The position numbers and the translations under genes were made by a program. The notes under the pieces are model-generated. The model was not told the DNA's origin, did no database searches, and worked only from the letters and a program-made list of their open reading frames with translations. A DNA stretch of 64,000 nucleotides from positions 248,001 through 312,000 of the forward strand of contig FLMG01000941.1 in the NCBI GenBank assembly GCA_900088475.1, written 5' to 3'. Every line of letters begins with the position of its first letter. Positions within the stretch are counted from its first letter, which is position 1. Shown piece after piece: positions 15,054 through 64,000 of this stretch. This DNA comes from Hyphochytrium catenoides (lineage: Eukaryota; Protista; Hyphochytriomycota).

Positions 15054-16907
15054 AAAACAGCACGGACAGAGACACTGGAAGGATGATGATGAAGACCCTG
15101 GTATGACGGACGAAGGTCTCCATCCACAGCATCGCACGAAGAGAGAAGCTTGATTCTTCTCATCTGAGTCATCTTCTATCAGGATAGCAAGTGAACACGA
15201 GCATGTTCAGCGATAAGCAGAAAAGCGCGGGAGATCACCTTGTGACCCAATTTATTCATCTTTGTATCAACCAACCAGCGAAAATAGGTCTCTTCAAGCC
15301 AACTGAAGGAATATAAAGGGGGTTTCGAATTTCTTCAGATATCCCCTCGTAGTCTCGCTTTTTCTATAGCGTACTTTAATCTTGAAGCCAGAGAGGTGCC
15401 TTACCCTAAAACGATTAAAAGACGGTTAGAAGGACCATAGGTACAGATTCAGCACTTGTCACTTGAAATTTACAAAAGGGTCATCAAAGTCTGAGACTCA
15501 AGAGACTACGGCAGACTAGAGACTAGAGACTTGAACTGATGAATTTTTTATAGGATCCCTGTAACGGGGGGAAAAAGATAACTGATTTTGATATCTAGCT
15601 GCGATTCATGTCTTCTTGATTCGTTCATGGTGTGATTGGCCCAACTGACAGCTTTGTACATCGTACAGCTGACGTTGATCCTTGCCCTAACACAGCTCAT
15701 CAAAAGGCTGTATTATTGTAGACAGTGTGTAAGCACAGACTCTTCGGAGTTGCCAGGAATGTCCAGTTCCTCGTGAGTCGTGGTAGATAATCTATAGAAC
15801 TCATAGAGCGTTAGGAGAGGTAGAGCTGCTGCGAGGAAGACTCACAGAACAGCCACCACAAACAGAACACAAACAAGACCTAAAATTAGGGAACAAAAGA
15901 AGAAGCTTCTAATCCTTTCACCCACCCGTTTCTTCTATGCTCCACATACCCGTGATTACCCGTTATGTCAAGGTTTTATCCTATTTTTTCAGGACTTTCT
16001 CAGCTCTAAAAATGCCTGCCACCCTACTTAGCTGGGAGAGGTGATCAGATCTAACTGTCCCACCCGCCCTATCTGGCCAATGAAAGGGCAGGGTAGAGCA
16101 GGTCTGAGGACAGCATCAAAGTACGACAGAAGTGCACCGCAAGCTTATAGAAGCCAGCAGGGGAGAAAAGGAAGAGAATAATGGAAAGCCATCTCCTAAA
16201 AGCCTTGCATCGCTCCCTGATCATTATCCGGAGCCTGTACCAATGAAAGCCCAATCAATAGGGCTTATTGTACCTACCGTTGTCGAACATGTGCCGCCTA
16301 AATGTCTTCGCTTTCTCTCCTCACTCAAGTTGTTCCAGTTCTATCCTAGGGGCCTCAAAACTAATAGCCCTTTAGTCAAAAGCTCTCGGGCTTCCTAAGC
16401 GATTAAGCCTCATACCAAATCGAAGACCAAGAAAGGCCAAAGGGGCTGTAGAGGTTAAATAGGAGAATGTACCAAAGCATCATCAGTGACTGATGTGATT
16501 CCATTTCTGAGAGGGAGGTCAGAGGACGGACCAGGGACGGACTCTTCTCTCTCATCTCTCCAGTGTTTAGGCGACATTATTCCTCCTGTTTAGGCTCTGT
16601 ATCTCTCCGTCGCCTCTCTCTTCTCAGAGTACGGTCATTTGCCCACTCTGTTTGGCTCGTTTGGCAACCCGTACAAAGTAGCCTTATGTGGAACCCCTCA
16701 CACTCCTCCTTTGAGCCATCAAATGCACCAGTGCAGCTAGTGCACCACACTCTCTACAGCCTCATTTTCGAATTGCGGGCTCAAGCGGCAGATTGGAGCG
16801 AATTAAGTCTGCAGATTTGGAGCTCCAATAATCTTCGTGTCTGCCAAATACATTTCATAAGGAAGGACCAGACAAATTGCCGGTGTCGCTCTTCATCACC
16901 TGCCATA

Positions 16908-18557
16908 ATGATGGTCAAACCTTTACGCCCGACAAAGTCCTTCAAGAAACGGCTGAGCAGTGAAGACTGCCGTAAGCGACGCGGGGAAGCTGCAGTCCAA
17001 ATTCGCAAGTCTAAGAAGAGTGACTTTCTATCGAAGAGGCGTTACAGCGACTCCACCGTCCTTCAGAATATCACTTCGGCGGAACAGTTCGAGAGTGAAA
17101 AGGTGGTTAATGTACTTTCCAATGCATTTATCTCCATTAGGTCCACCATTCCTCACGAAAGGCTTTCTGCGGCACAAGCTATCCGCTGGGCAATAGCAGT
17201 CAAAAACATCCCCGTTGAAGAAGCTTTAACTTTAGAAGCAGGAGCTGACCTCCTTCGAAATCTGGTTAATCTGGCCAAGTACGACCAGAGGCCTGAGGTA
17301 CAGCAAGAAGTTCTTTGGGTTTTTGGCCAGGTGGCTGCAGGCAAAATGACCAAGAGACTTGCCGACGCTGGAGCTCTGCAGACCATTATGGACCTTCTAC
17401 AGAAGTCCTCCTTCGAGGTTGTACTTGAAGAATGCATAGGGTGTGTTGCAAACATAGCGGGCGATAGTACAGAGCTGAGGGATTATATGGTTCAGCTAGG
17501 TGCCCTTCAGTGCATTCTTCACCGGCTACCGAAGCTTTCCTCTAAGAGGTCGATCCAGCATGCTACGTGGGCGCTGTCAAATCTCATCGGATCCTCCTTT
17601 ACTACACCGGAGGTTCTTGCAGAGGCAGCTCGGATCATTGTGCGGATTATCAGTCAACACTTGGATGAAAAAGTGCTCTCTGAATCTTCGTGGGCTTTGG
17701 CTCACATCACTGACAAGGGCGAAGCCATTTGCTTCCAGATTATTCTCGAGAGCAACTGCATGCCGATTCTGTTGAGATTTCTGGCACATAAGAACTACCA
17801 CATCGTCCTGCCCGCATTGCATACCCTCTCTAACCTCATGTGCTACTGCGATGAGGTTGGGCGGCGACACTTACTCTCGTTAGGGGTCCTCAGAGCTCTG
17901 AGAAACCTACTAGAAGAGCTGTCAGGCTTTATCAAGAATCAGAAGGTATGGAATGTAACGACTTCGGAGCTGTACCGCCTTAGCCAAAGAATGAGAGTCG
18001 AAATCTGCAAGATCATTGCGTTGGTAGCAAGCTCTTGCCAGCATATATTCCTGGATGACATCGTGAAGTGTGACGGCCTTATTTTAGCCTTAACAGCGGA
18101 GATACTGAACGGAGAGTGGCAAGTGAAGAAGGCCGCCATGACATCGTTGGCGAGCATTCTTTTGCCTGCGAACAACTACCAGCTGCACCAAGCTACCTCT
18201 GCAACCCTCATCAAGGCAGTATGTAGCATGCTGGATGTCTCTGAGGTAGAAATGATCTTAGCTTCTGTCCAGTGTCTAGATGTCATTCTAGCCGCTGGCG
18301 AGGGCGAAGGCTGCCTCAAGGAATACCCAAGCATGGTAGAGGAGGCAGGAGGCCTTGACAAACTGGAGAGCCTTCAAGAGCATGAAAGCGTGGATGTATA
18401 CAACGCTGCTGTCTACTTACTGGAGAAGCACTTCAACGCGGAAGATGCAGATATGGAGTTGGAGGACGAGGATGTTGCTCCAGTTACCTGTACCACCACA
18501 AATATGTTTGACTTCGGTCTGCCAGTGCAGCATCGGGTTGCATCTCCCGCATGGTAA
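16908..18557 (+). CDS. Divergent importin-alpha-like protein (IBB domain + ARM repeats), intronless
   Basis: IBB: FKKRLSSEDCRKRRGEAAVQIRKSKKSDFLSKRR. ARM motifs NIAGDSTELRD and ATWALSNL. C-terminal VEEAGGLDKLESLQEHESVDVYNAAVYLLEKHF. The start is most likely the ATG at 16908, not the GTG at 16563. Confidence 0.9.
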   Translation: MMVKPLRPTKSFKKRLSSEDCRKRRGEAAVQIRKSKKSDFLSKRRYSDSTVLQNITSAEQFESEKVVNVLSNAFISIRSTIPHERLSAAQAIRWAIAVKNIPVEEALTLEAGADLLRNLVNLAKYDQRPEVQQEVLWVFGQVAAGKMTKRLADAGALQTIMDLLQKSSFEVVLEECIGCVANIAGDSTELRDYMVQLGALQCILHRLPKLSSKRSIQHATWALSNLIGSSFTTPEVLAEAARIIVRIISQHLDEKVLSESSWALAHITDKGEAICFQIILESNCMPILLRFLAHKNYHIVLPALHTLSNLMCYCDEVGRRHLLSLGVLRALRNLLEELSGFIKNQKVWNVTTSELYRLSQRMRVEICKIIALVASSCQHIFLDDIVKCDGLILALTAEILNGEWQVKKAAMTSLASILLPANNYQLHQATSATLIKAVCSMLDVSEVEMILASVQCLDVILAAGEGEGCLKEYPSMVEEAGGLDKLESLQEHESVDVYNAAVYLLEKHFNAEDADMELEDEDVAPVTCTTTNMFDFGLPVQHRVASPAW

Positions 18558-25286: not shown

Positions 25287-26147
25287 ATGAGAGTCTCCAA
25301 GTGGCTCAGTGGCGGAGAGTTGAGCTCATGCGGAAGCTCACAAGAACGCAAGAGTTTGGCTGCTTGTAAGGAAGCTGCAGCTGGAAAAGTGGACTCAAAT
25401 GCAGCTAGTTATCAAAATCCAGAAGTGGGGTTTGTTCTTGACCGGCTGCCTTTGAGCTCTGTGCCTTCTGATGCTACAAAAGCTTTGGAAGACCACGGGC
25501 TTTCTTGCCATAAGTCCGTTTCGAGCTATTCAGCGACTGATATCGAGCTACCTAAGAATGGCTTGGAGCTGGCTGGACCAAAAGACAAAGGTGACGGTCT
25601 TCTCTATATCTCCAGCCCCGCTTCTACTGCGGATTGCTCTGAGGTAGATGAAGAGAAGACTGATGACGCTACGCTTTACATTGAAGAACCTGAGCCGGGA
25701 GAAGATGACGACGATGCAGCCAAGTCGCTGGAAGTTACCGCCTCACACGGAGGAAAGTCCGCGCCCAAGTCCTTTCTCAAGAACATCATTGCTGGGTGGA
25801 GAAAGAGAAAGATGCAGACTTTGGAGATGAAGATTGCTGAAAGAGACCACTACATTCTTGCTGAGCTTTACAACAGCAAGGCACTCATGAGAGACAGAAC
25901 GCGCATATCTTTCCCCAGAAAGCTTATTTCTGACCTGGACACCATCAGAGAAAACCACGAACTGTCACTCCGTTCTCCGGTGCACATGATGTCCTCTAAA
26001 CTTCTTCGTCGCTCTCCCAAGGACGAGACGATGCGGCGCTGTATCTTGGGTTATCAAGCCTGGATATGTAGAGGTCAATTGGCGACGAGGCGCGGGGCAG
26101 ACCCTTATGCTCCTGTGCACTATCATCGGCCCAGGAGGTTCTACTAA
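25287..26147 (+). CDS. Intronless hypothetical protein, 286 aa
   Basis: ATG-initiated 861-nt ORF with an acidic middle and basic C-terminus. No recognisable domain. Confidence 0.6.
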   Translation: MRVSKWLSGGELSSCGSSQERKSLAACKEAAAGKVDSNAASYQNPEVGFVLDRLPLSSVPSDATKALEDHGLSCHKSVSSYSATDIELPKNGLELAGPKDKGDGLLYISSPASTADCSEVDEEKTDDATLYIEEPEPGEDDDDAAKSLEVTASHGGKSAPKSFLKNIIAGWRKRKMQTLEMKIAERDHYILAELYNSKALMRDRTRISFPRKLISDLDTIRENHELSLRSPVHMMSSKLLRRSPKDETMRRCILGYQAWICRGQLATRRGADPYAPVHYHRPRRFY

Positions 26148-31298: not shown

Positions 31299-31329
<31 letters not shown>

Positions 31330-31447
31330 TTTACTCTCTCCCTCTCTCTGCTCTTGATGTTCCCCACTTTTGACTAGCTCCTTTCCGCCTCTTCTCGCGC
31401 CTTCCTGGCTCTTCTGACGCTCTCCGTCGATCATCCACTGCCCTGCC

Positions 31448-34400
31448 ATGGGCCTTCTCTCTCTCCTGTCTCGCCCACAGACAGGGACCTGGAGGCTTCT
31501 AAGGCATAAGCCGCTTAGAGCTCTTGCAGGAAGAGACTGCGGTCTCACATCGCCGCATTCCTGTCTCCTTCCCACTCTGTCCGCCTCCCAACCCTCTTCT
31601 GTGCTCACTCCGCTCTCAAGGACCTTTCACTCAAAGAAAGAGAGCTCGGGAGAGAGAGAAAAGAGAGACAGAGCGAGAGCTAACGGGAGAGTGCAGCTTT
31701 CTCTTCCTCTTCTCTTTCATCAGCACAAGCGCTCGCATATTGGTCACCACCATCACCACGACCATGGTCACCCAGTGATTGACCCGTCAGGCGGCAAGAA
31801 GCCTTCGGATAGGAAAGAGGATGGTCAGTCAATTCATCTTCTTGCCAGACTGTCTTTCTCTCTCACAAGCTCTCCTCTCTGGTCCTCTTTCCGCTACCCT
31901 CCTCATCCCATCTCCTCTCGCCCCCACATCAACCTCTCTCTCTGTCTCTCGTGCTGCCTTCTCTCCTTTTCCGCTCCCTCTGTATCTTCGCTCTCGGTCC
32001 ACCCTTTCTCTCTCGCTCACACACACAAAACCTCTTTTTTTCTCTCTCTTTCACTGTCCTCCCTCTCTTTCCCTCTCTCTTTGTGTTTGGTGTGTAGATG
32101 TCTGTCTCTCTGTCGCCCAAACACACGCAAAGCCTCTCTCTCTTCAAGTCTCTCTCTCCCTTTCTCTCTACCTTTATAGCCCTCTATCATAACTGTCTCC
32201 GTCTCCCTATTGACATATCCTCCTTCACCTTAGAAAGGGAGAGCATCAGGGTGACGAATCTGGGTCTAGCCTCCAACGTGGTGCTTGCAGTGGGGAAGGT
32301 AAGCCCGTAGAAGGAAGAGAGGGCCAAGATTGGCCGGGGAGAGAGAGAGTCAATTTACTCTGCCGCTTGGAGAGAAGAGAAGGGAGGGTGTGGGCAGTAG
32401 ATGTATGTTAGGCTCACAAAACGTAAATGCTGACGTTTAACTCCTCTCTTTCCATGCCGTATGCTCCTCTCTCTTGCTCTCTCCGTCTTGCATTCTCTCT
32501 GTTCGTTTTTTTTTTCTCTCTCTCTCTCTCTCTCTCTTTACCTGTCATGTTAATTCTCTCTCTATTCCTCTCGTTCTCTATTATATTCTCTCACTGTGCA
32601 TCTCTCTTTCTATATGGGCTCACATCTTGGCGCTCTTTCTCATCGCTTTTTCCCGCTTCTCACCGCCCGGCCCTTCTTCTCTTTTTCTCTCACTCCTTTG
32701 CTTTCTCAATCGCTGTCTCTCTTTCTCTTGGCCTCCTTTTCCATTATCACCCTGTAACTTCATGTATCGTCTTCGATCTCTTCTGCAATACTCTCTGTTG
32801 CCTGGGGTTTGCAGGGAGTGGCTGGCGTCATGACTAACTCTACCGGATTATTGGCCGACGCTGTTCACTCCGTCTCGGACATGCTTTCGGACTTTGTCAC
32901 TCTTTGGACGGTAAAAATGGCGAGAGCTCCTCCTGACGAGAACCATCCTTATGGTAAGCGGGAGAAACGGGAGAGAGAGGAGGACAGAGGAGAAAGGAAA
33001 GGGTGAACAGACAGACAGAAAGAGGGAGATGGCAAGGAGTAAGGAGAGCTAGAGAGTGAGGGAAAGGGAAGACAACGGGCTGGAGACTGGGTCTTCTCAT
33101 GTCCGTGTCCTCTATCATGTCCCCTCTCTCTCTTGCTCTCTCTACCTGCCTGTTTCCGCTTCTCCTTTATGTCCTCAGGGCATGGTAAGTTTGAAGCCCT
33201 TGGGACCCTCATGGTAGGGGCGCTACTCTTCTCAGCGGGAGGAGGAATTGGCTGGCACGGTCTGGAGCAGATTCTCATGTACACGGAGGTCATTCCAGCC
33301 CATCCTGGAGCAGGTACGATGAACATCTACCGGTTGTCTCCATGACTATTGGACTGCTTTGAGCGGCTGCCTTGGACTAAACACTATTTGTCTCTTAGTG
33401 TTGTTGGTGTGTCTTATCTTTATGCTAATTCTCATCATAGTAAGCGCGTCTCCGCTTCCGAGCCTCATTTCCTTGCAGTGACCTTAATAGCCAAGGTAGA
33501 GCTAGGGTTAGGCCTGCCATTGTTTGAACAACCTATGCTTTCGGCCCCATCCTATGTACCCTTACCCTCTTTCAGGTCATCACCATCACGATGTGAGCGA
33601 TGCTCTAGCGATGGTCAACCCAGGCCTCGCGGCTGGTGCAGCGCTCTTCTCTATAGTTGTCAAAGAGTGGCTCTTCCATGCCACCGTGAAAGTCGGAAAA
33701 AAGACTAACAGCAATGTAGGAGCCTCCTCTTCGCTCTATTTCATGAGTTATATAATTTTTAGATTCTTCCTTCTCCTCTTTGTTTGAGTTGCAGGCTTTG
33801 TCTCTCCCTCTTCGAGTCATTTGTTCGTATCGTCCTTACTTTGCTTATATTTTCTTGCTATGTCGTTCCTTTAGTCTTCATGGCTTGGTGACTGTTGCTG
33901 TCCCTCAGGTGCTTATTGCCAACGCGTGGCATCATCGTGCAGACTCAGTCTCGTCGGTCATCGCCTTCCTGGGCCTAATGGGCGCTATGTATGGGTATCC
34001 TTATCTTGACCCGGGTAAGAGGAAGCTGAGTGCTGTGGAGCTGTTGGAGGGTATTAGGGAAGTTTAGGATGAGACAGGGAAGACAGAACAGGCCAAGGCG
34101 GAGGAGAGAGTTAACCAGTAAAGTCGGTGTGTAGGACTCAAAGCCCGCCGCTTTACTCCTAAGAGCCTTACTCCTCTCTTGATTGCAGCTGCGGGAGTCA
34201 TTGTTTCCGGAATGATTATGAAGATGGGCGCTTCCGTTTGCTGGGACAGGTAAGAACTCCGTTTCTTGCAGAGAAATAAGGGGTGGTGATCGATCTAACG
34301 CCCATCTCTCAGCATCCGTGAGCTTACGGATGAGAATCTACAGGCAGACGTGGTGAAGTTTCTAGACGAACAGGTGCCCTTGCTGGTGTCCCACTTTCTC

Positions 34401-36860: not shown

Positions 36861-38322
36861 TCAATCCTCGATTTCCTTTCCTTCCTCTCCAAGCAGTGCG
36901 TCAAGGAGCCTAAGGTCCACCTCCCACTCTTCTTCGTGGAAAGGAAAGGCAAGTAGAAAGTAAATCAGATCCATGTTGGTGCACTCCGAGACTTGTACGT
37001 CTTCTGCCAGCTGGTCCAGAGCTTCAGGACTGAAGGAGACAACAGGAGAGAGAGAAGACTGGGAAGCCATAGAGGCTGTCTCCCAGTCTCCTTCATCCTC
37101 TCCATCCGCCTCGCTGTCTCCTCGTGCTTCCTCGGCCTTGCTCTGCTCTATCCCATCTTCTCTTTGTCCCTTGTTACTACTTTGCAAATCTGCGGCTTGC
37201 TCATCTATCCTCTGACGCTTCCTTCCTTTCTTTGTGGACTTTTCCTCTTTCTCCATCGAGCTTTCCTCTTCTTCATCGTCCTCGACCTCAACTTTTCCTT
37301 CTGGCAGTTCTGGCTGGTCTCCAGGAATGACCACCATCATCTCTAGAATAGCCTGGAGAGGCTCATAGTCCGGTGCAAAGGAGATCTTGTACCAGAGGCG
37401 TGTGAAAGAGAGCGTCGCTCCTCCCTGTCCCTGCTTGTCCCCATCGGCCTCCATCATCTGGATCTCTCTCTCCTGCTGCTCAATCATTCTTTTGAACTGA
37501 AAGCGCAGCTGAACTCTCTCTCGCTTCATCCACTCTCTCCTGTGCACCTTTCCTTCTCTCAGCCGCTCATTACTGAGGGAGAGGAGAATGTCAATCGACG
37601 AGTAGTTCAAGGTCCGAATGTCCTGCACGCTCTCAACCGCCAGCATCTGAATCCATCTTTGTCCTTGAGAGTTAAAGGAACGATCCTTAGACTTTCGCCG
37701 CAGAAAGTCCGTGTACGGGTGCGTGAGAAGGCGCTCTATGATCTGGAAAGAGAGGAGGAAGGAAGAGGAGAGAGAGGACTGCTTAGAGAAACAGAAAGGG
37801 TATCTACGCTTCGCTAAAAGGGAGTAAGGAGATAGAGCAAAGGAACAAGAGAGAAAGGAGGAGCCGAGAGGTGAAGGAAGATGAATCGATGACTGAACAG
37901 GAGAGGTAACGGAGAGGAAAAGAGTTGAGAGAACAGAGAGCGAGGCGGACGGAAGGAGCGAGGGGCACGAAGAGAAGAGACAGAGTGGGGAACGGAGAGA
38001 CCCACAGTGGGGAAGGAAGAGAGGCAGAGAGAGAGAGAAGAGAAAAACGAGAAGAGGAGAGGAACGGGGGAAAAGGGGAGAGAGAATGGAGAGAAAGAGA
38101 GAAGGAAGCGGGGGCGAGAGACAGAGACAGAAAGAAGGCTCTAGAGGTGACCGATAGACAGCTAGGACCCACCAGTTCTTTGACGTAGAGTCTCTGTGCG
38201 AACTCCTGGATCTTGAGCAGAACATCCTTCGGCTCGCTGACCTCGCGATAGAGACTCGCCAGGTGCTGCACCTCCTGCTGCAGCACAGCGTCCGAGTATT
38301 TGTCCCGCAGGTTCAGAGCCAT
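36861..38322 (-). CDS. Two-exon hypothetical protein with an acidic, charged C-terminal half
   Basis: Exon 1 MALNLRDKYSDAVLQQEV..., a CT-rich intron (~37745-38165), exon 2 IIERLLTHPYTDFLRR...FPFHEEEWEVDLRLLDALL. Confidence 0.65.
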
Positions 38323-38658
38323 AGTGAAGGGAACTTCGGTCGCAGCAGTGAATGACAGTCAGGCCCCTAACTGCCAACCGGCAGAGAAGCGCTGACTCGA
38401 GAGGGAAGAGCCAGAAACAGTGCCTGGTGCAGAATGGTGCCCGGGAGAGAGATGGTAGAGACGACTAGACAAACAAGGGGACTTCCCTGCTTCAGGTTCT
38501 AGGACAGAGAGTGAAAGCGAGATACCGAGGAGGGAGAAGGGGGAGATATGATAAAGGGGAGAGAGAGAGAGCGAGCGCGAGAGGGAGAGATGAGGGAGAG
38601 AATGGGGCAAGAAGGGACAAGACGGCGAGGGGGACAGAGAAGCACAGACAGAGAGAGA

Positions 38659-38702
<44 letters not shown>

Positions 38703-39434
38703 CAAAAGAGCTTTGGCCTAGGCGAGGCGAAACATCAGAAACACATTCAGGTCGACTGGATAAGGAACGACCAGTCTGGTAGAGAATAAAACCGCTATAG
38801 GTTAATGATCGGCACTCTTTTATAGCGTATATTCCGAATTTCCTGGAGCCCCAAAGGGCGCAAACACCTCGAAAGTCTCACCCTCCTTCCTCTCCCTTTT
38901 GTCTCTCTCTCCTCCTTTTCCTCTCTCTCCCCTCACATCACCCTGCCTCCCTCCTCCTTCTCCTCAGAGATAAGGAGAGGGAAGAGATGGCCTCCCGGTT
39001 CATGAACTCGACAACTTTGCTGACCTCCACCGCCATCGTAGAGCATCCGCTCTCAGGGTAAGCACGCTGTGCCTTGTAGAGCAAGTGATTGCCAAGTGTG
39101 AAGGGCGGCGAGAAGGGAGGATGAGGGAGAGGAAAGATGAGTGAAGAAGAAGGGATGAAAGAACGGCTCTGAGAGGCTCAGGTAGAGAGGGTGACCCTGT
39201 AAGGCCACTTGTGGAGCTTAAGGTTCATTAATAGTTTAGCCAAGGCAAAGGAGAAGACGTTGGCACCCTGGCATGAGAGAGGAAGATAGGTGAAAACGAT
39301 AGGAAAAGGAGAGGAAAAGACAGGAGAACGAGGAGGTAGATGATTAGGGGAAAGACTAAGCAGCCTTCGCAACGACCAGCAGTCCATCTGAGCCACTGCT
39401 TGGAAGATGACAAATTAGAGAGAGGAGAGAGACA

Positions 39435-59939: not shown

Positions 59940-62857
59940 ATGGTGGAGTCAACAGAGCTCGCGGCTGATCCAGGTAAAAACTCTAAAGTGGGAGGGAGTA
60001 GGTGCTTCTGCTGGCGATGGCCTTGACTTTACGTCTTCTGAGACTGACATAGATTTTGATATGAGGATTGTGATAGACGGGTCAACCTAACGATAGAGCT
60101 CTCATCGCAGTCTCTAACGTCTTATCGTTGTTTTTTATCGCAGCCTATGACTTGACACAGGTGCTGTCGCCATTCTTGGATCTGCACCTGGTCTTCCCGC
60201 TCATCCAGTTTATCGAAGAGAGGGAAATGTACAGTCCAGAGGGGCTCTTACAAGCTAAGCTAGACCTGCTTCGGCCGACGAATATGATAGATTATGCGAA
60301 GGATATATACTGCCAGCTCAACAACACAGAGGATGCTCCTGCAGGTTGGGCTTGATGACCTCCTCTTATTGGGTTGCGGCCCCAACAACGCCTTTGCAAT
60401 TATCCTTTTCTATGTTGGGTATCTGTGACACTCGCGGACTGAGCTTTCTCATCGTGCGACAGAGTTTGATGAGAGAAGAGACACAATTCTAGATATTATG
60501 GCGTCTCTCAAGGATGAGGCCAAGGTTATCTTGGACCTAATAGAGGACCAAGAAGAGTTTGAAAGGCTTCAGACAAACAAGCAGTTTACCCGACAGCACC
60601 TGGCTGAGGCCTATGATGTGCGTTCGTGATTGCAAACATTATACTTTCGGATATCACTGAGCGCTGAACCCTCGTCCATAGATTCACACCGAGACTCTCG
60701 ATGCGCTGTACAAGTATGCTAAGTTCCAGTATGAGTGCGGCATCTACGGTGATGCACTTGTGTATCTGACTTGCTATTGGTACGCAACTCTCTCTTTTCT
60801 TCCTTGTCAGTTTCCTTCTTTGTCCAGAGTCCTAAGGCTAAGGACTATTAGATGGGGCGCGAACCTCCAGTGAGCGGCATGCCCAATGCTGAGCACGATA
60901 ACCTCTATGTTGCTTATTTTTGTGTGCTTCTAACCCTCTTTCGATGGCTGCTTCTCTTTGGGATGTTTACAGTCAACTTTTCGAGGACCACCCTTCAAAG
61001 GTGATCCCAGCGCTTTGGGGCAAGTTTGGCTCCGAGATTTTGATGATGGACTGGGATGCAGCTCTGGAATCTCTGAATAAGCTCAGAGACCTTTTGGATG
61101 GTCAGGTGAGGAGACTAGTAGAAGATAGAGCTAGTGCGCCATCAATAGCAGATATACAGAAAATATGTTTCTGTCAGGCGACGATCTTCTCGAGGATGCT
61201 TAAATTTAATCTTTGAGAACTGATTGGCGTCTCAAGATGCCACTGGGGAAAAAATTTGCCTGAGAGAAGACGTAGACGCCAGCTTTAGCCATCAAAAGCC
61301 CAATTCGCACCGAGGCTGTGGCTCATTTAGTCCATGATATTGTCGCTGCAGCGCTTCCCCGCTGCATGACTAACGCTGCTTTCCTCTCTCCTTGGTCCCT
61401 GCACTCAGTCGTTTGCAGCGCCTTTGGAACAGCTTCAACAGCGATCATGGCTTCTTCACTGGGCTCTGTTCGTCTTTTTCAATCATCCAGAAGGCAGAGA
61501 CAGTATCATCGACTTTTGCTTCCAGCAGAGGTCCGACCATCTGCTGCGATACTATCCCGGGCTGGCGCCTGCTCTTGGTTATTTGCCTCCTATTGTTCAT
61601 TTCTGATATTGGTACCTACCGCCGTGCCTCCCGTCACTTGGCTAACTGCAAACGGTGTGATTCTAGATACATGGAGGCTATCCAGACCAATTGCCCGTGG
61701 CTCTTACGCTACCTCACCACTGCAGTGATCATCAACAAAAGACGGCGCAATGTCTTGAAGGACCTAATCAAGGTTATCCAGCAGGTGCGATATATATCAA
61801 ATCGTCTCTTACTGTTCTGAAGGGTTTGGCGTCACCGACGGGGCCGGATCACTTTGTGCTCGTTGCTATGACAATGTTTATCTGCCTGTTTCTATTCATA
61901 ACATGCCTGCGTTTCTCTCTTCTAGGAGGGCAATACCTACAGAGACCCCATCGTTGACTTCTTTGAGTGTTTATACGTAAATTTCGACTTTGAGGGCGCT
62001 CACCAGAAGTTGAAAGAATGTGAAAGCGTGCTTGTTAGCGATTTCTTCCTTGTCTACTGCCATGAAGAGTTCATGGAGAACGCCAGACAGTTCATATTTG
62101 AGATCTACTGCAGGATACACCAGAAGATCGGCATCGGGTAAGTGTGGGCCTGGAGAGATACATACGGACGAGGCATGACTAGCGAGGCCTGAAGAAGTAT
62201 GACTGCTTGTTGGGGAACGGTAGTCAACCTACATTTTTTGCTGAGCAATCGAGAGCTTTCATCGGGAACTGGAGGGAAGGCAGACAGCGGGCAACAGTAA
62301 GAAAAACTGAGTCTCAATTTGACCTTTGACAGAATGTTAGCTGAGAAGCTGGGTATGGAGGAAGACCACGCTGAGAGATGGATAGTCGACCTCATTCGCG
62401 CCGCACGGCTGGATGCCAAGATTGACTCACAATCAGGAGTCGTCATCATGGGTACACAATCAGTTAACATGTAAGTGGGAGCCACAGGACAAGAGAGGTA
62501 GACGTACGGTATAGGAATAGGTATTTTTGTTGATTACGAAGCTCCGGGGAATTCAGTGACCTTAGGGACTGCTGACGAGCTCTCAACGTTTATCCTTTCT
62601 TCTAAAACTGATGCACCGTACACTGATGTTCCGCTCCCTCGTTGTCCGCTTTCAGCCATCAGCAGGTGATTGAGAAGACGAAGGACCTGGTAGCGAGAAG
62701 CCACGTCCTTGCCAACAATCTAGATGAGACCAATGAGTCTGGAGACCGCAAGAAGGGCGGCAGGAGAGACGATAGGGGAGACAGACACCGTGGAGACAGG
62801 GACAACAGGGAGAGAGGAGGGCGGAGAGATAACAGGGAGAGGCGTGACAGATACTAA
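59940..62857 (+). CDS. EIF3E: Eukaryotic translation initiation factor 3 subunit E
   Basis: [78 protein letters not shown] domain [28 protein letters not shown]. Confidence 0.96.
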
Positions 62858-63154
62858 GCTCTTATAGGAAGCGCCACCTTAACGTCTCCTACTCTGTCCT
62901 ACATGGTAGTCGTTCCAAAAGAGAAGGTGAAGTGACGAAGAGCAGGAGCAGTAAGCTTACATAGGAACAGCGTGCTGTGCCCTGAGGGTTTTCTATTGAA
63001 GCAAATAAACACGAAGACAATGACTGAATATTCATACTTAGAGTGCTTCCGCTTCACGTGCTTCCGCCTTCGATGTCTCCCTCTTGCTTGCGGCTTCGTT
63101 TTCCTGTTCTAGCGACTGATACGGGTCATAAGAGAAGCTGCCGAAGTTGGAAGT

Positions 63155-63287
63155 AGAAATGGACTCCAATCTTGCTGGCTGTCGTCACTGAATGCGCGAA
63201 GATGAATCGTGCGACAGTCACTCCTAGTAGGGTTCATTCATCTTCGCGCATTCAGTGACGACAACCAGCAAGATTGAGTCCATCTCT
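63155..63287. ncRNA. Long stem-loop 1 (~52-bp stem, 28-nt loop), candidate small-RNA precursor
   Basis: 63155-63207 pairs with 63236-63287, with one single-base bulge and two A-C mismatches (G-U pairs on the minus strand). Confidence 0.45.
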
Positions 63288-63434
63288 GATACTGTTGAAT
63301 GTCTGTCTGGAAGAGGTACAGCAAGCTGCGAAAGGCGATATAAAGGAGGTAATCATTCACTCAATCAGCGACCTCCCCTCCTCCCTAAGGGTTCAATGCT
63401 CCTGTCACCCCTGAGCTCGCAGCCTACCCCTAAC

Positions 63435-63592
63435 CCCACTTTCTTACTTCAACGCCATCAGGCTATTCTTATTGGCATGGATCGCACGGCGACGGCCTCG
63501 AAATTGTGACTCGTGGAGCATTGCTTGATCCACTTCAATTTGTGATTCATGACAATGAGAATAGCTTGATGGCGTTGAAGTGAGAAAGTGGG
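63435..63592 (+). ncRNA. Long stem-loop 2 (52-bp ungapped stem), candidate small-RNA precursor
   Basis: 63435-63486 pairs with 63541-63592: 46 Watson-Crick pairs, 5 G-U and 1 G-A on the + strand. The loop can pair further (aaattg/caattt, gtgga/tccac). Confidence 0.55.
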
Positions 63593-63607
63593 CAAGGTTT
63601 GCCCGAT

Positions 63608-63755
63608 GTCTCTTGAGCTCTTCGAATGCGCTGAACCCATACTTAAGCGCATTGGTCACAGAGACGAGAAATACAATCTCAAAGGATGGACGCAAAAGAC
63701 ATGCCTCTGTAACCAATGGACTTATGGGTTCAGCGCATTTGAAGAGCTCAGAGAC
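63608..63755. ncRNA. Long stem-loop 3, candidate small-RNA precursor
   Basis: 63614-63641 pairs with 63723-63750 (one G-U on +). It extends inward via cattggtcacagag/ctctgtaaccaatg and outward via gtctc/gagac. Confidence 0.45.
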
Positions 63756-64000
63756 CTTGTTCAAGCATACACCTTAGATAGGTTGGCCTTGAATCTCTGC
63801 CGCTGTCATCCGCGAACCGCCACCATCCTGCTGCCTTGCGTGCGTGCGCACAACAGACGTCTGGCCCGCATCCAGCATATGACAGATTCACAACGTCACA
63901 GGGACATGTGGCGCAAGAGCAGAATCCAGTTGCCAGTTGCCTTCAGTTCTTTGTAAGTTTCTGGAAGCCCGGCACATCTCCTTTGTCACCTCTGATATAT

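What the first reader, a model, noticed from the sequence alone, without database searches (positions are those of the whole stretch)
63155..63755. Three long, unrelated hairpins packed in 600 bp downstream of eIF3e: candidate polycistronic miRNA/small-RNA locus
Seen: three near-perfect fold-backs at 63155-63287, 63435-63592 and 63608-63755. They share no obvious sequence, hairpins 2 and 3 are only 15 nt apart, and I see no target-site duplications or credible ORF. Weaker pairings flank them (cttccgccttcg/cgaagttggaag at ~63061-63153, gctgcga/tcgcagc at ~63325-63423, ctgct..cttgcg/cgcaagagcag at ~63828-63922). Established: brown algae and some other stramenopiles have independently evolved miRNAs with long plant-like precursors. 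Inference: a clustered hairpin-RNA locus, with its own transcript or read through from eIF3e.
Basis: partly seen in the sequence, partly recalled or inferred. Interest (0 to 1): 0.8.

Follow-up and report, generated by a model that had tools for sequence, protein, structure and literature searches.

The report
Three single-copy hairpins after eIF3e
Three unrelated, very stable DNA fold-backs sit within 600 bases just downstream of a translation-factor gene in a poorly sampled soil microbe; they are real, single-copy and not transposons, and they look like precursors of small regulatory RNAs, but no expression or conservation data could be reached to show that they are.

Summary
The core observation holds. 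Three mutually unrelated fold-backs (63155-63287, 63435-63592, 63608-63755) fold at -84 to -98 kcal/mol, z -9 to -15. They are the only long inverted repeats in 64 kb that are not low-complexity, and they take the top five of 2,524 sliding-window folds.

Contig depth across the hairpins equals that of the neighbouring eIF3e gene. No further copy at 80% identity or more was laid, apart from one divergent second form of hairpins 2 and 3. No target-site duplications are present, and nothing matched in metagenome or viral collections. Three independent data sets carry the hairpins, so they are not an assembly artefact.

The small-RNA reading is structurally plausible: foldbacks of 133-158 nt with 52-62 aligned stem positions match Phytophthora MIR8788 and plant or algal precursors. 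It remains untested. No RNA run was listed, no relatives were found and Rfam hits are far below threshold. Stems are no less polymorphic than flanks. The G:U strand bias is real only for hairpin 2 (5:0, p=0.06) and cancels overall (7:5).

The best reading is a young hairpin-RNA (siRNA/miRNA-like) locus, at about 0.42. Neutral local inverted duplications are nearly as likely. A first-stage note had already flagged hairpin 2's G:U bias.

The parts
63155..63287 (.). Hairpin 1: 133-nt fold-back with 50 Watson-Crick pairs, 2 A.C mismatches on + (G:U on -), one 1-nt bulge and a 28-nt terminal loop (63208-63235).
   Evidence: MFE is -89.5 (+) and -96.8 (-) kcal/mol, z -14.5 and -15.4. One unbranched contig at gene-level depth spans it. 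The other strain (X2/X3) differs at 63215 and 63233 (loop) and at 63250 (stem, giving U.U).
63435..63592 (+). Hairpin 2: 158-nt fold-back with 46 Watson-Crick pairs, 5 G:U pairs on the + strand, 1 G.A mismatch and a 54-nt loop region. It is the only hairpin with a clear strand preference, and the + assignment is tentative.
   Evidence: MFE is -98.1 (+) and -76.9 (-) kcal/mol. The 5:0 G:U bias gives two-sided p=0.0625. A divergent second form (10 substitutions and 13 indel letters over 63408-63601) is present in X1 and X2.
63608..63755 (.). Hairpin 3: 148-nt fold-back, 15 nt after hairpin 2. The outer stem is about 28 bp with one G:U on +. After an asymmetric internal loop comes an inner stem of about 15-23 bp with A.C mismatches on + (G:U on -). 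Weak pairing extends to 63599-63764.
   Evidence: MFE is -84.3 (+) and -87.5 (-) kcal/mol, z -11.7 and -12.2. A 178-nt contig from a rhizosphere metagenome covers 63594-63771 with 4 differences.
62655..62857 (+). Context: last exon and stop codon of the eIF3e gene, about 300 nt upstream of hairpin 1. The exon start is approximate, taken from the splice acceptor.
   Evidence: ORF 62642-62857 matches Pfam PF21357 EIF3E_C, E 2.1e-08.
63004..63009 (+). The only AATAAA in 62800-64000. If it is used by eIF3e, its mRNA would end about 120 nt before hairpin 1, which argues against simple 3'UTR residence of the hairpins. It is a weak signal.
63339..63344 (+). The only TATAAA in 62800-64000, 96 nt upstream of hairpin 2. 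It is a possible but statistically unremarkable promoter element for an H2-H3 transcript.
63290..63325 (.). 36-nt segment immediately 3' of hairpin 1 that is replaced by a single C in the other strain (X2/X3), a strain-level indel at the hairpin's edge.
   Evidence: tables 5 and 5c.

Best explanation
This is a young hairpin-RNA locus. Three independent local inverted duplications in the intergenic DNA downstream of eIF3e would each form, when transcribed, a near-perfect RNA duplex of 52-62 aligned stem positions on a 133-158-nt foldback. In an organism with Dicer and Argonaute, such duplexes would be diced into about 21-25-nt small RNAs. More likely these are heterogeneous hairpin siRNAs or 'proto-miRNAs' than precisely processed canonical miRNAs. 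What is shown: the hairpins exist, are extreme outliers, are single-copy, are not MITEs, are present in several strains or haplotypes, and fold independently on either strand. What is inferred: transcription (by read-through from eIF3e, from an own promoter, or antisense), dicing, and any target. Hairpin 2 most likely acts on the + strand. Hairpins 1 and 3 give no reliable strand call, so a single polycistronic + strand transcript is possible but not favoured by the data.
For: Structure: z-scores of -9 to -15, with no shuffle as good. They take the top five of 2,524 windows. The whole locus folds as three independent hairpins, -334 kcal/mol on + and -332 on -. Clustering: these are the only three inverted repeats in 64 kb that are not low-complexity, and all lie within 600 bp. 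That is hard to get from independent neutral events. Single copy: contigs run unbranched through H1 at the same depth as the eIF3e gene. Only one divergent second form was laid over H2/H3 at 80% likeness or more. No other copy was found in the window, in metagenome contigs (27, 28) or in viral contigs (46-48). Size class: the foldbacks are 133-158 nt. Phytophthora MIR8788 foldbacks are 136-140 nt (PMC3804510). Means are 170 nt in Ectocarpus, 136 in Arabidopsis, 140 in Chlamydomonas and 132 in Dictyostelium (PMC4513859). In Phytophthora, 21-nt small RNAs derive mainly from inverted repeats. All three stems are similar in length, 52-62 aligned positions. RNA-specific hint: all five transition mismatches of H2 are G:U on +. 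Weak trend: between strains, loops changed more than stems, 3/65 vs 2/216, p=0.08. First-stage notes, unverified, report an Argonaute gene and other fold-backs in this genome.
Against: There is no evidence of transcription: no RNA run was listed for the stretch. There is no evidence of conservation or covariation, because no relatives or retrievable variants were found. Stem polymorphism between strains equals that of the flank, 2/216 vs 6/549, p=1. The one stem change in H1 (63250 A>T) breaks a pair without compensation. The second form of H2/H3 is more diverged (about 5% substitutions plus indels) than the flanks (1-3%). G:U bias cancels overall (7:5), and H1 and H3 lean to the opposite strand from H2. 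Near-perfect long stems are typical of non-functional young inverted duplications as well as of proto-miRNAs. No target was found in the window. Known stramenopile miRNAs rarely cluster and lie mostly inside genes. An AATAAA at 63004 suggests that eIF3e mRNA may end before the hairpins.
Confidence: 0.42

Rival explanations
1. The hairpins are neutral by-products of a local inverted-duplication process such as fold-back priming or template switching during replication or break repair. This genome appears prone to copying short segments in inverted orientation next to themselves. Three such events, or one complex multi-switch event, hit a tolerant intergenic stretch. The hairpins have no selected function, whether or not stray transcripts are diced.
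For: First-stage notes on the same genome (unverified) list many fold-backs. They include transposon and gene fragments folded back on themselves and an intron carrying an antisense copy of its own exon. Stems are no more conserved than flanks between strains, p=1, and a pair-breaking change in H1 is uncompensated. The H2/H3 region is hypervariable between the two forms, and a 36-nt indel abuts H1, as expected at an unstable site. The pooled G:U bias is nil, 7:5. The transition/transversion ratio in arm mismatches (11:3) is not different from between-strain changes (49:33), p=0.24.
Against: Three events within 600 bp and none in the other 63 kb need a hotspot or a single complex event. Arm divergences differ (about 4%, 12% and 14%), which fits separate ages better than one event. 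The arms have diverged more than the strains have, yet all three hairpins persist in every data set that covers them. The similar stem lengths and H2's 5:0 G:U pattern are unexplained by pure neutrality.
Confidence: 0.38
2. The hairpins are cis-acting structured elements of the eIF3e transcription unit. As RNase III/Dicer-cleavable stem-loops in an extended 3'UTR or read-through transcript, they could serve as fail-safe terminators or as a brake on eIF3e mRNA level, with small RNAs only a by-product.
For: The position is 300-900 nt downstream of the eIF3e stop on the same strand for which H2 folds best. No separate gene is evident up to the window's end. RNase III-dependent fail-safe termination at stem-loops downstream of genes is established in budding yeast (Rnt1p; own knowledge, not checked here).
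Against: No transcript data exist. An AATAAA at 63004 lies upstream of the hairpins. H1 and H3 show no + strand preference. No other gene in the window has such hairpins downstream.
Confidence: 0.1
3. The hairpins are MITEs or other transposon-derived terminal inverted repeats, or the edge of a larger element that runs off the window.
For: The geometry fits that of many MITEs: inverted repeats with 28-81-nt spacers and 130-160-nt units. The window ends 245 nt after H3. A metagenome contig covers almost exactly H3 (63594-63771), as a repeat unit might.
Against: Depth over the hairpins equals single-copy gene depth, and the contig runs unbranched through H1. At 80% likeness or more, no extra copies were laid from about 100 Mb of contigs, apart from one second form. 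No TSDs are present. The three share no sequence. Nothing matched in the window, metagenome or viral collections. The metagenome contig has depth 2 and shares a strain SNP with X2, so it fits a single read pair from a conspecific strain.
Confidence: 0.04
4. The hairpins are an assembly or sequencing artefact, such as chimeric palindromic reads.
For: Fold-back chimeras are a known artefact of some library types (own knowledge).
Against: Independently assembled contigs from runs of 2011, 2017 and 2024 contain the hairpins. H1 is in X1, X2 and X3; H2 is in X1 and X2; H3 is in X2 and X4.
Confidence: 0.01

Closest known systems
Phytophthora MIR8788 and MIRNA-like inverted repeats such as pin-IR2758 (oomycete stramenopiles; PMC3804510)
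   Same: They are intergenic foldbacks of the same size class (136-140 nt for MIR8788) in a heterotrophic stramenopile. In that genus, 21-nt small RNAs derive mainly from inverted repeats, with processing from precise to heterogeneous. MIR8788 arms are more conserved than its loop, and a weak trend of the same kind is seen here.
   Different: MIR8788 is backed by small-RNA reads, northern blots, conservation across three species and validated target cleavage; none of that is available here. There is no sequence similarity. The stems here are longer and closer to perfect, and there are three unrelated hairpins side by side.
Brown-algal miRNA loci (Ectocarpus, Saccharina; PMC4513859, PMC5381526)
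   Same: They have long plant-like foldbacks (mean about 170 nt) that arose from genomic hairpins rather than from transposons or gene fragments, and they are lineage-specific and evolve fast.
   Different: About 75% of brown-algal loci lie inside genes and they rarely cluster; only one Saccharina cluster holds unrelated miRNAs. This locus is intergenic and tightly clustered. There is no sequence similarity, and expression here is unknown.
Plant polycistronic precursors containing non-homologous miRNAs (PMC2812943)
   Same: Several unrelated hairpins lie within a few hundred bases and are potentially carried on one transcript.
   Different: The plant cases are defined by a spanning transcript, mature miRNA reads and functionally related targets. 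None of these could be tested here, and the conflicting G:U strand biases do not favour one transcript.
Young plant MIRNA genes or proto-miRNAs born by inverted duplication (Allen et al. 2004, cited in PMC4513859), and animal hpRNA endo-siRNA loci (own knowledge)
   Same: They are near-perfect, long, single-copy stems of recent origin, expected to give heterogeneous siRNA-like products.
   Different: In the plant model the arms match a parent or target gene. No parent sequence was found in the 64-kb window, and the rest of the genome could not be searched.
MITEs
   Same: They are short units bounded by inverted repeats that fold into hairpins and can seed miRNA genes.
   Different: This locus is single-copy, lacks TSDs, and its three units belong to no shared family.

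Membership tests
miRNA gene (plant/algal-type criteria as applied in PMC4513859 and PMC5381526) | A self-complementary precursor with a foldback under about 300 nt, able to hold a 20-24-nt duplex with few mismatches and no large bulges | tested here: met
   The foldbacks are 133, 158 and 148 nt. Their stems have 50-53 Watson-Crick pairs and at most one bulge or internal loop in any 21-nt stretch of the outer stems.
miRNA gene (plant/algal-type criteria as applied in PMC4513859 and PMC5381526) | Small-RNA reads: a dominant miRNA and miRNA* pair with 2-nt 3' overhangs, precise 5' ends and strand-specific origin | not testable with these tools
   No RNA run was listed for the stretch, and the single read-laying run was used on DNA runs.
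miRNA gene (plant/algal-type criteria as applied in PMC4513859 and PMC5381526) | Not an extended hairpin that yields many other small RNAs (this separates miRNAs from hairpin siRNAs) | tested here: inconclusive
   The stems span 52-62 aligned positions (50-53 Watson-Crick pairs), enough for two or three consecutive duplexes. That leans towards the hairpin-siRNA class, but only reads can decide.
miRNA gene (plant/algal-type criteria as applied in PMC4513859 and PMC5381526) | Conservation of the hairpin, or compensatory changes, in related strains or species | tested here: inconclusive
   No relatives were found. Between strains, H1 has one uncompensated stem change and two loop changes, and H3 has one stem and one loop change. 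Stem and flank rates do not differ, p=1.
Any curated Rfam family (including miRNA precursor families) | A score at or above the family's gathering threshold | tested here: not met
   The best hits are mir-31_2 at 38.8 bits against 97, mir-616 at 37.6 against 100, MIR172 at 25 against 70 and mir-9447 at 25.4 against 67. These are generic hairpin matches.
MITE / transposon terminal inverted repeats | Multiple dispersed copies in the genome | tested here: not met
   Depth is about 250, the same as the neighbouring gene. An unbranched contig runs through H1, and only one second form was laid at 80% likeness or more. No copies were found in the window or in the collections.
MITE / transposon terminal inverted repeats | Target-site duplications flanking the inverted repeats | tested here: not met
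   The flanks are GCCGAAGTTGGAAGT / GATACTGTTGAATGT for H1, CAGCCTACCCCTAAC / CAAGGTTTGCCCGAT for H2 and GAAAGTGGGCAAGGT / GCATACACCTTAGAT for H3. None shows a direct repeat.
Hairpin-RNA (hpRNA / inverted-repeat siRNA) locus, as pin-IR2758 in Phytophthora infestans | A long, nearly fully complementary single-copy inverted repeat with a short spacer | tested here: met
   The arms are 88-98% complementary and the spacers are 28-81 nt. The locus is single-copy.
Hairpin-RNA (hpRNA / inverted-repeat siRNA) locus, as pin-IR2758 in Phytophthora infestans | Transcription through both arms, and Dicer-sized small RNAs that map to the stem | not testable with these tools
   No RNA run was listed.

The most novel reading that the evidence does not exclude
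This is a genuine polycistronic cluster of three non-homologous, precisely processed miRNAs in a heterotrophic, non-brown-algal, stramenopile-like lineage. That would be a further independent emergence, or a much older origin, of miRNA genes in stramenopiles. The clustered intergenic layout would be unlike the brown-algal pattern. A variant of this reading is that the hairpins are Dicer-cleaved fail-safe terminators that tie eIF3e expression to the RNAi machinery.
Probability: 0.12. Interest if true: 0.7.

Novelty: new member of a known kind. Interest (0 to 1): 0.42.

Why it matters
Convincing miRNAs in stramenopiles are limited to brown algae, plus one family in Phytophthora. If these hairpins are transcribed and diced, they would give a tractable, single-copy example of how hairpin-RNA genes are born from local inverted duplications, in a deep-branching and poorly sampled lineage. 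Together with the many other fold-backs noted in this genome, they could show whether the lineage has a miRNA-like layer of regulation or only a mutational habit of making palindromes. As it stands, this is a well-defined candidate for a small-RNA experiment, not a demonstrated RNA gene.

Tried and rejected
1. MITE or transposon reading: rejected on copy number, absence of TSDs and absence of a shared family.
2. Assembly artefact: rejected, because independent runs carry the hairpins.
4. Known RNA family: only sub-threshold generic miRNA-hairpin hits in Rfam.
5. Coding: ORFs crossing the hairpins have no Pfam family and are not on record as called genes.
6. Parent or target gene in the window: blastn-short found nothing beyond 12-14-mers.
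7. Strand assignment from G:U pairs: only H2 is biased (5:0). The pooled count is 7:5 and the whole-locus energies are equal on both strands.
8. Fetching orthologues or strain variants for covariation all returned nothing. This covered two metagenome pattern scans, three viral scans (46-48), four exact-protein look-ups and a protein search with the eIF3e last-exon ORF (52).
9. RNA evidence: no RNA run was listed.
10. Organism identity: the importin-alpha search gave only one relative, at 59% identity. A guess that the genome is Hyphochytrium-like fits the published intron and exon sizes (PMC5795050) but was not verified, and nothing rests on it.
11. The sequence of the divergent second form of H2/H3 could not be recovered, because read laying lists only part of the differences and is capped at one call.

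Full report
OBSERVATION

The three fold-backs are in the sequence as described.
- H1 (63155-63287) has 50 Watson-Crick pairs, two A.C mismatches on the + strand, one bulge and a 28-nt loop.
- H2 (63435-63592) has 46 Watson-Crick pairs, five G:U pairs on the + strand, one G.A mismatch and a 54-nt loop region.
- H3 (63608-63755) has an outer stem of about 28 bp, an asymmetric internal loop and an inner stem.

As RNA they fold at -84 to -98 kcal/mol, with z-scores of -9.4 to -15.4 against dinucleotide shuffles on both strands.

They are the only long inverted repeats in the whole 64-kb window that are not low-complexity; the others are (GA)n/(CT)n tracts. In a sliding 150-nt fold of the whole window on both strands (mean -35, sd 9 kcal/mol) they take the top five of 2,524 positions.

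Folded as one 701-nt transcript, the locus keeps three independent hairpins on either strand, with equal energy: -334.4 on + and -332.2 on -.

All four spacer and flank segments fold like their shuffles, z -0.6 to +1.0.

CONTEXT

The gene upstream is eIF3e. The last-exon ORF 62642-62857 matches Pfam EIF3E_C, so H1 begins about 300 nt after the stop codon. The only AATAAA in 62800-64000 is at 63004, and the only TATAAA is at 63339, between H1 and H2. No gene clearly enters from the window's right edge. ORFs that cross the hairpins have no Pfam match.

The organism is not identified. An intronless importin-alpha ORF has a single relative, at 59% identity, among 5.8 billion proteins, so the lineage is poorly sampled. 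First-stage notes call the genome stramenopile-like and intron-dense (unverified). A rhizosphere metagenome carries near-identical sequence, so it is a soil organism.

COPY NUMBER AND REALITY

DNA contigs of four public runs were laid on 60001-64000 at 80% likeness or more.
- In X1, which matches the window exactly, a 1,167-nt contig runs unbranched from the eIF3e gene through H1 at depth 246. That equals the depth of the gene's other contigs (246-268).
- Over H2 and H3 the only additional material is one divergent second form at depth about 80-90. It has 10 substitutions plus 13 indel letters over 63408-63601, and 19 substitutions plus 20 gap letters over 63687-63943.
- The same H2 variant contig (63408-63601) is present in X2, at a different ratio.
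- Variant contigs at similar depth also occur inside eIF3e, so the second form is most simply the other haplotype (or a segmental duplicate), not a repeat family.

A MITE family would have produced branched contigs and many-fold excess depth, and neither is seen. No arm recurs in the window, in JGI metagenome contigs or in viral contigs. No hairpin has a target-site duplication. The hairpins appear in assemblies of runs from 2011, 2017 and 2024, so they are not an assembly artefact.

TESTS OF FUNCTION THAT WERE POSSIBLE

(a) Strand-specific G:U pairs. H2's five transition mismatches are all G:U on +, which is why it folds at -98 on + and -77 on -. This was already noted by first-stage note s1-331287. 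The two-sided p is only 0.0625. H1 is 0:2 and H3 is 2:3 (or 1:3 within the hairpin proper) in the other direction. The pooled count is 7:5 (p=0.77), and heterogeneity among hairpins gives p=0.015-0.053. So H2 may be shaped as a + strand RNA, but the data do not support one + strand polycistron.

(b) Polymorphism between strains.
- X2/X3 differ from the window in H1 at two loop positions and one stem position. The stem change (63250 A>T) creates an uncompensated U.U.
- H3 has one stem change (63652 T>C, pairing kept only on the - strand) and one loop change.
- Stems change at 2/216 and flanks at 6/549 (p=1). Loops change at 3/65 against stems at 2/216 (p=0.08).
- This gives no sign of purifying selection on the stems, and only a weak loop-over-stem trend.

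(c) Known families. Rfam gives only generic miRNA-hairpin hits far below the gathering scores.

(d) Transcription. No RNA run was listed.

(e) Covariation. No orthologous or variant sequence could be fetched.

COMPARISON WITH WHAT IS KNOWN

The foldback lengths (133-158 nt) fall in the range of non-animal miRNA precursors: Ectocarpus mean 170, Arabidopsis 136, Chlamydomonas 140 and Dictyostelium 132 nt (PMC4513859). They match Phytophthora MIR8788 at 136-140 nt (PMC3804510).

In Phytophthora, 21-nt small RNAs come mainly from inverted repeats, with processing that ranges from precise (MIR8788) to heterogeneous (pin-IR2758).

Brown-algal miRNAs are mostly inside genes and rarely clustered. Only one Saccharina cluster holds unrelated miRNAs. 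Polycistronic precursors with non-homologous miRNAs are documented in plants (PMC2812943).

The stems here are longer and more nearly perfect than typical mature miRNA genes. They resemble hairpin-siRNA loci or young proto-miRNAs.

MOST LIKELY EXPLANATION

All three must have arisen by local inverted duplication. The arms differ by about 4%, 12% and 14%. That exceeds the between-strain divergence of 1-3%, so the hairpins are not brand new and probably differ in age.

Three such events within 600 bp, with none in the other 63 kb, call for either a mutational hotspot or retention by selection. I put 0.42 on a hairpin-RNA locus whose transcripts are diced into small RNAs, more likely heterogeneous hairpin siRNAs than canonical miRNAs.

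I put 0.38 on neutral inverted duplications. That rival gained weight from first-stage notes that this genome contains many fold-backs, including folded-back transposon and gene fragments (unverified). It is also supported by the lack of stem conservation.

The remaining weight is 0.10 on a cis-acting role in eIF3e 3' end formation or regulation, 0.04 on transposon origin and 0.01 on artefact. The first two readings overlap in origin and differ only in whether the RNA is made and used.

VERDICT

This is a real, statistically extreme, single-copy trio of hairpins. It is a good, cheap target for small-RNA sequencing and moderately interesting now. It would be clearly interesting only if precise processing or selection on structure is shown.

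Noticed in passing
window 63408-63601 and 63687-63943 (runs X1, X2): A divergent second form of the H2/H3 region exists: about 5% substitutions plus 13-20 indel letters, at depth about 80-90 against about 220-250 for the window's form in X1. The H2 variant contig is the majority form in X2 (21.5 of 33.9). Variant contigs at similar depth occur inside eIF3e too. This suggests unequal haplotype dosage (about 3:1 and 1:2) or a mixed or polyploid culture. The hairpin region is more diverged than its flanks.
   Followed up: partly
window 63594-63771 (run X4, rhizosphere metagenome): A 178-nt contig of depth 2 covers almost exactly hairpin 3 (63608-63755) and nothing else of the 4 kb laid. It has 4 differences and shares 63652 T>C with strain X2. 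It is probably a single read pair from a conspecific soil strain. The chance of a random fragment fully covering H3 is about 3%, so the coincidence is noted but unexplained.
   Followed up: partly
window 63290-63325: A 36-nt segment starting two bases after the end of hairpin 1 is replaced by a single C in runs X2/X3. This strain-level indel abuts the hairpin.
   Followed up: no
window 38536-38934 and 31305-32014: Long (GA)n tracts face (CT)n-rich tracts 200-330 nt away, giving low-complexity inverted repeats. This matches first-stage notes about GA...CT 'polarised' introns in this genome.
   Followed up: no
window 16563-18557 (+): An intronless importin-alpha ORF (IBB, Arm and Arm_3 domains) sits in an otherwise intron-dense region. 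Its only relative scored among 5.8 billion proteins is 59% identical, showing how poorly sampled this lineage is.
   Followed up: partly
window 36861-38225 (-) and 25287-26147 (+): ORFs of 454 aa and 286 aa have no Pfam family. The first also overlaps one of the more stable sliding-window folds, 36976-37175 at -59 to -66 kcal/mol.
   Followed up: no
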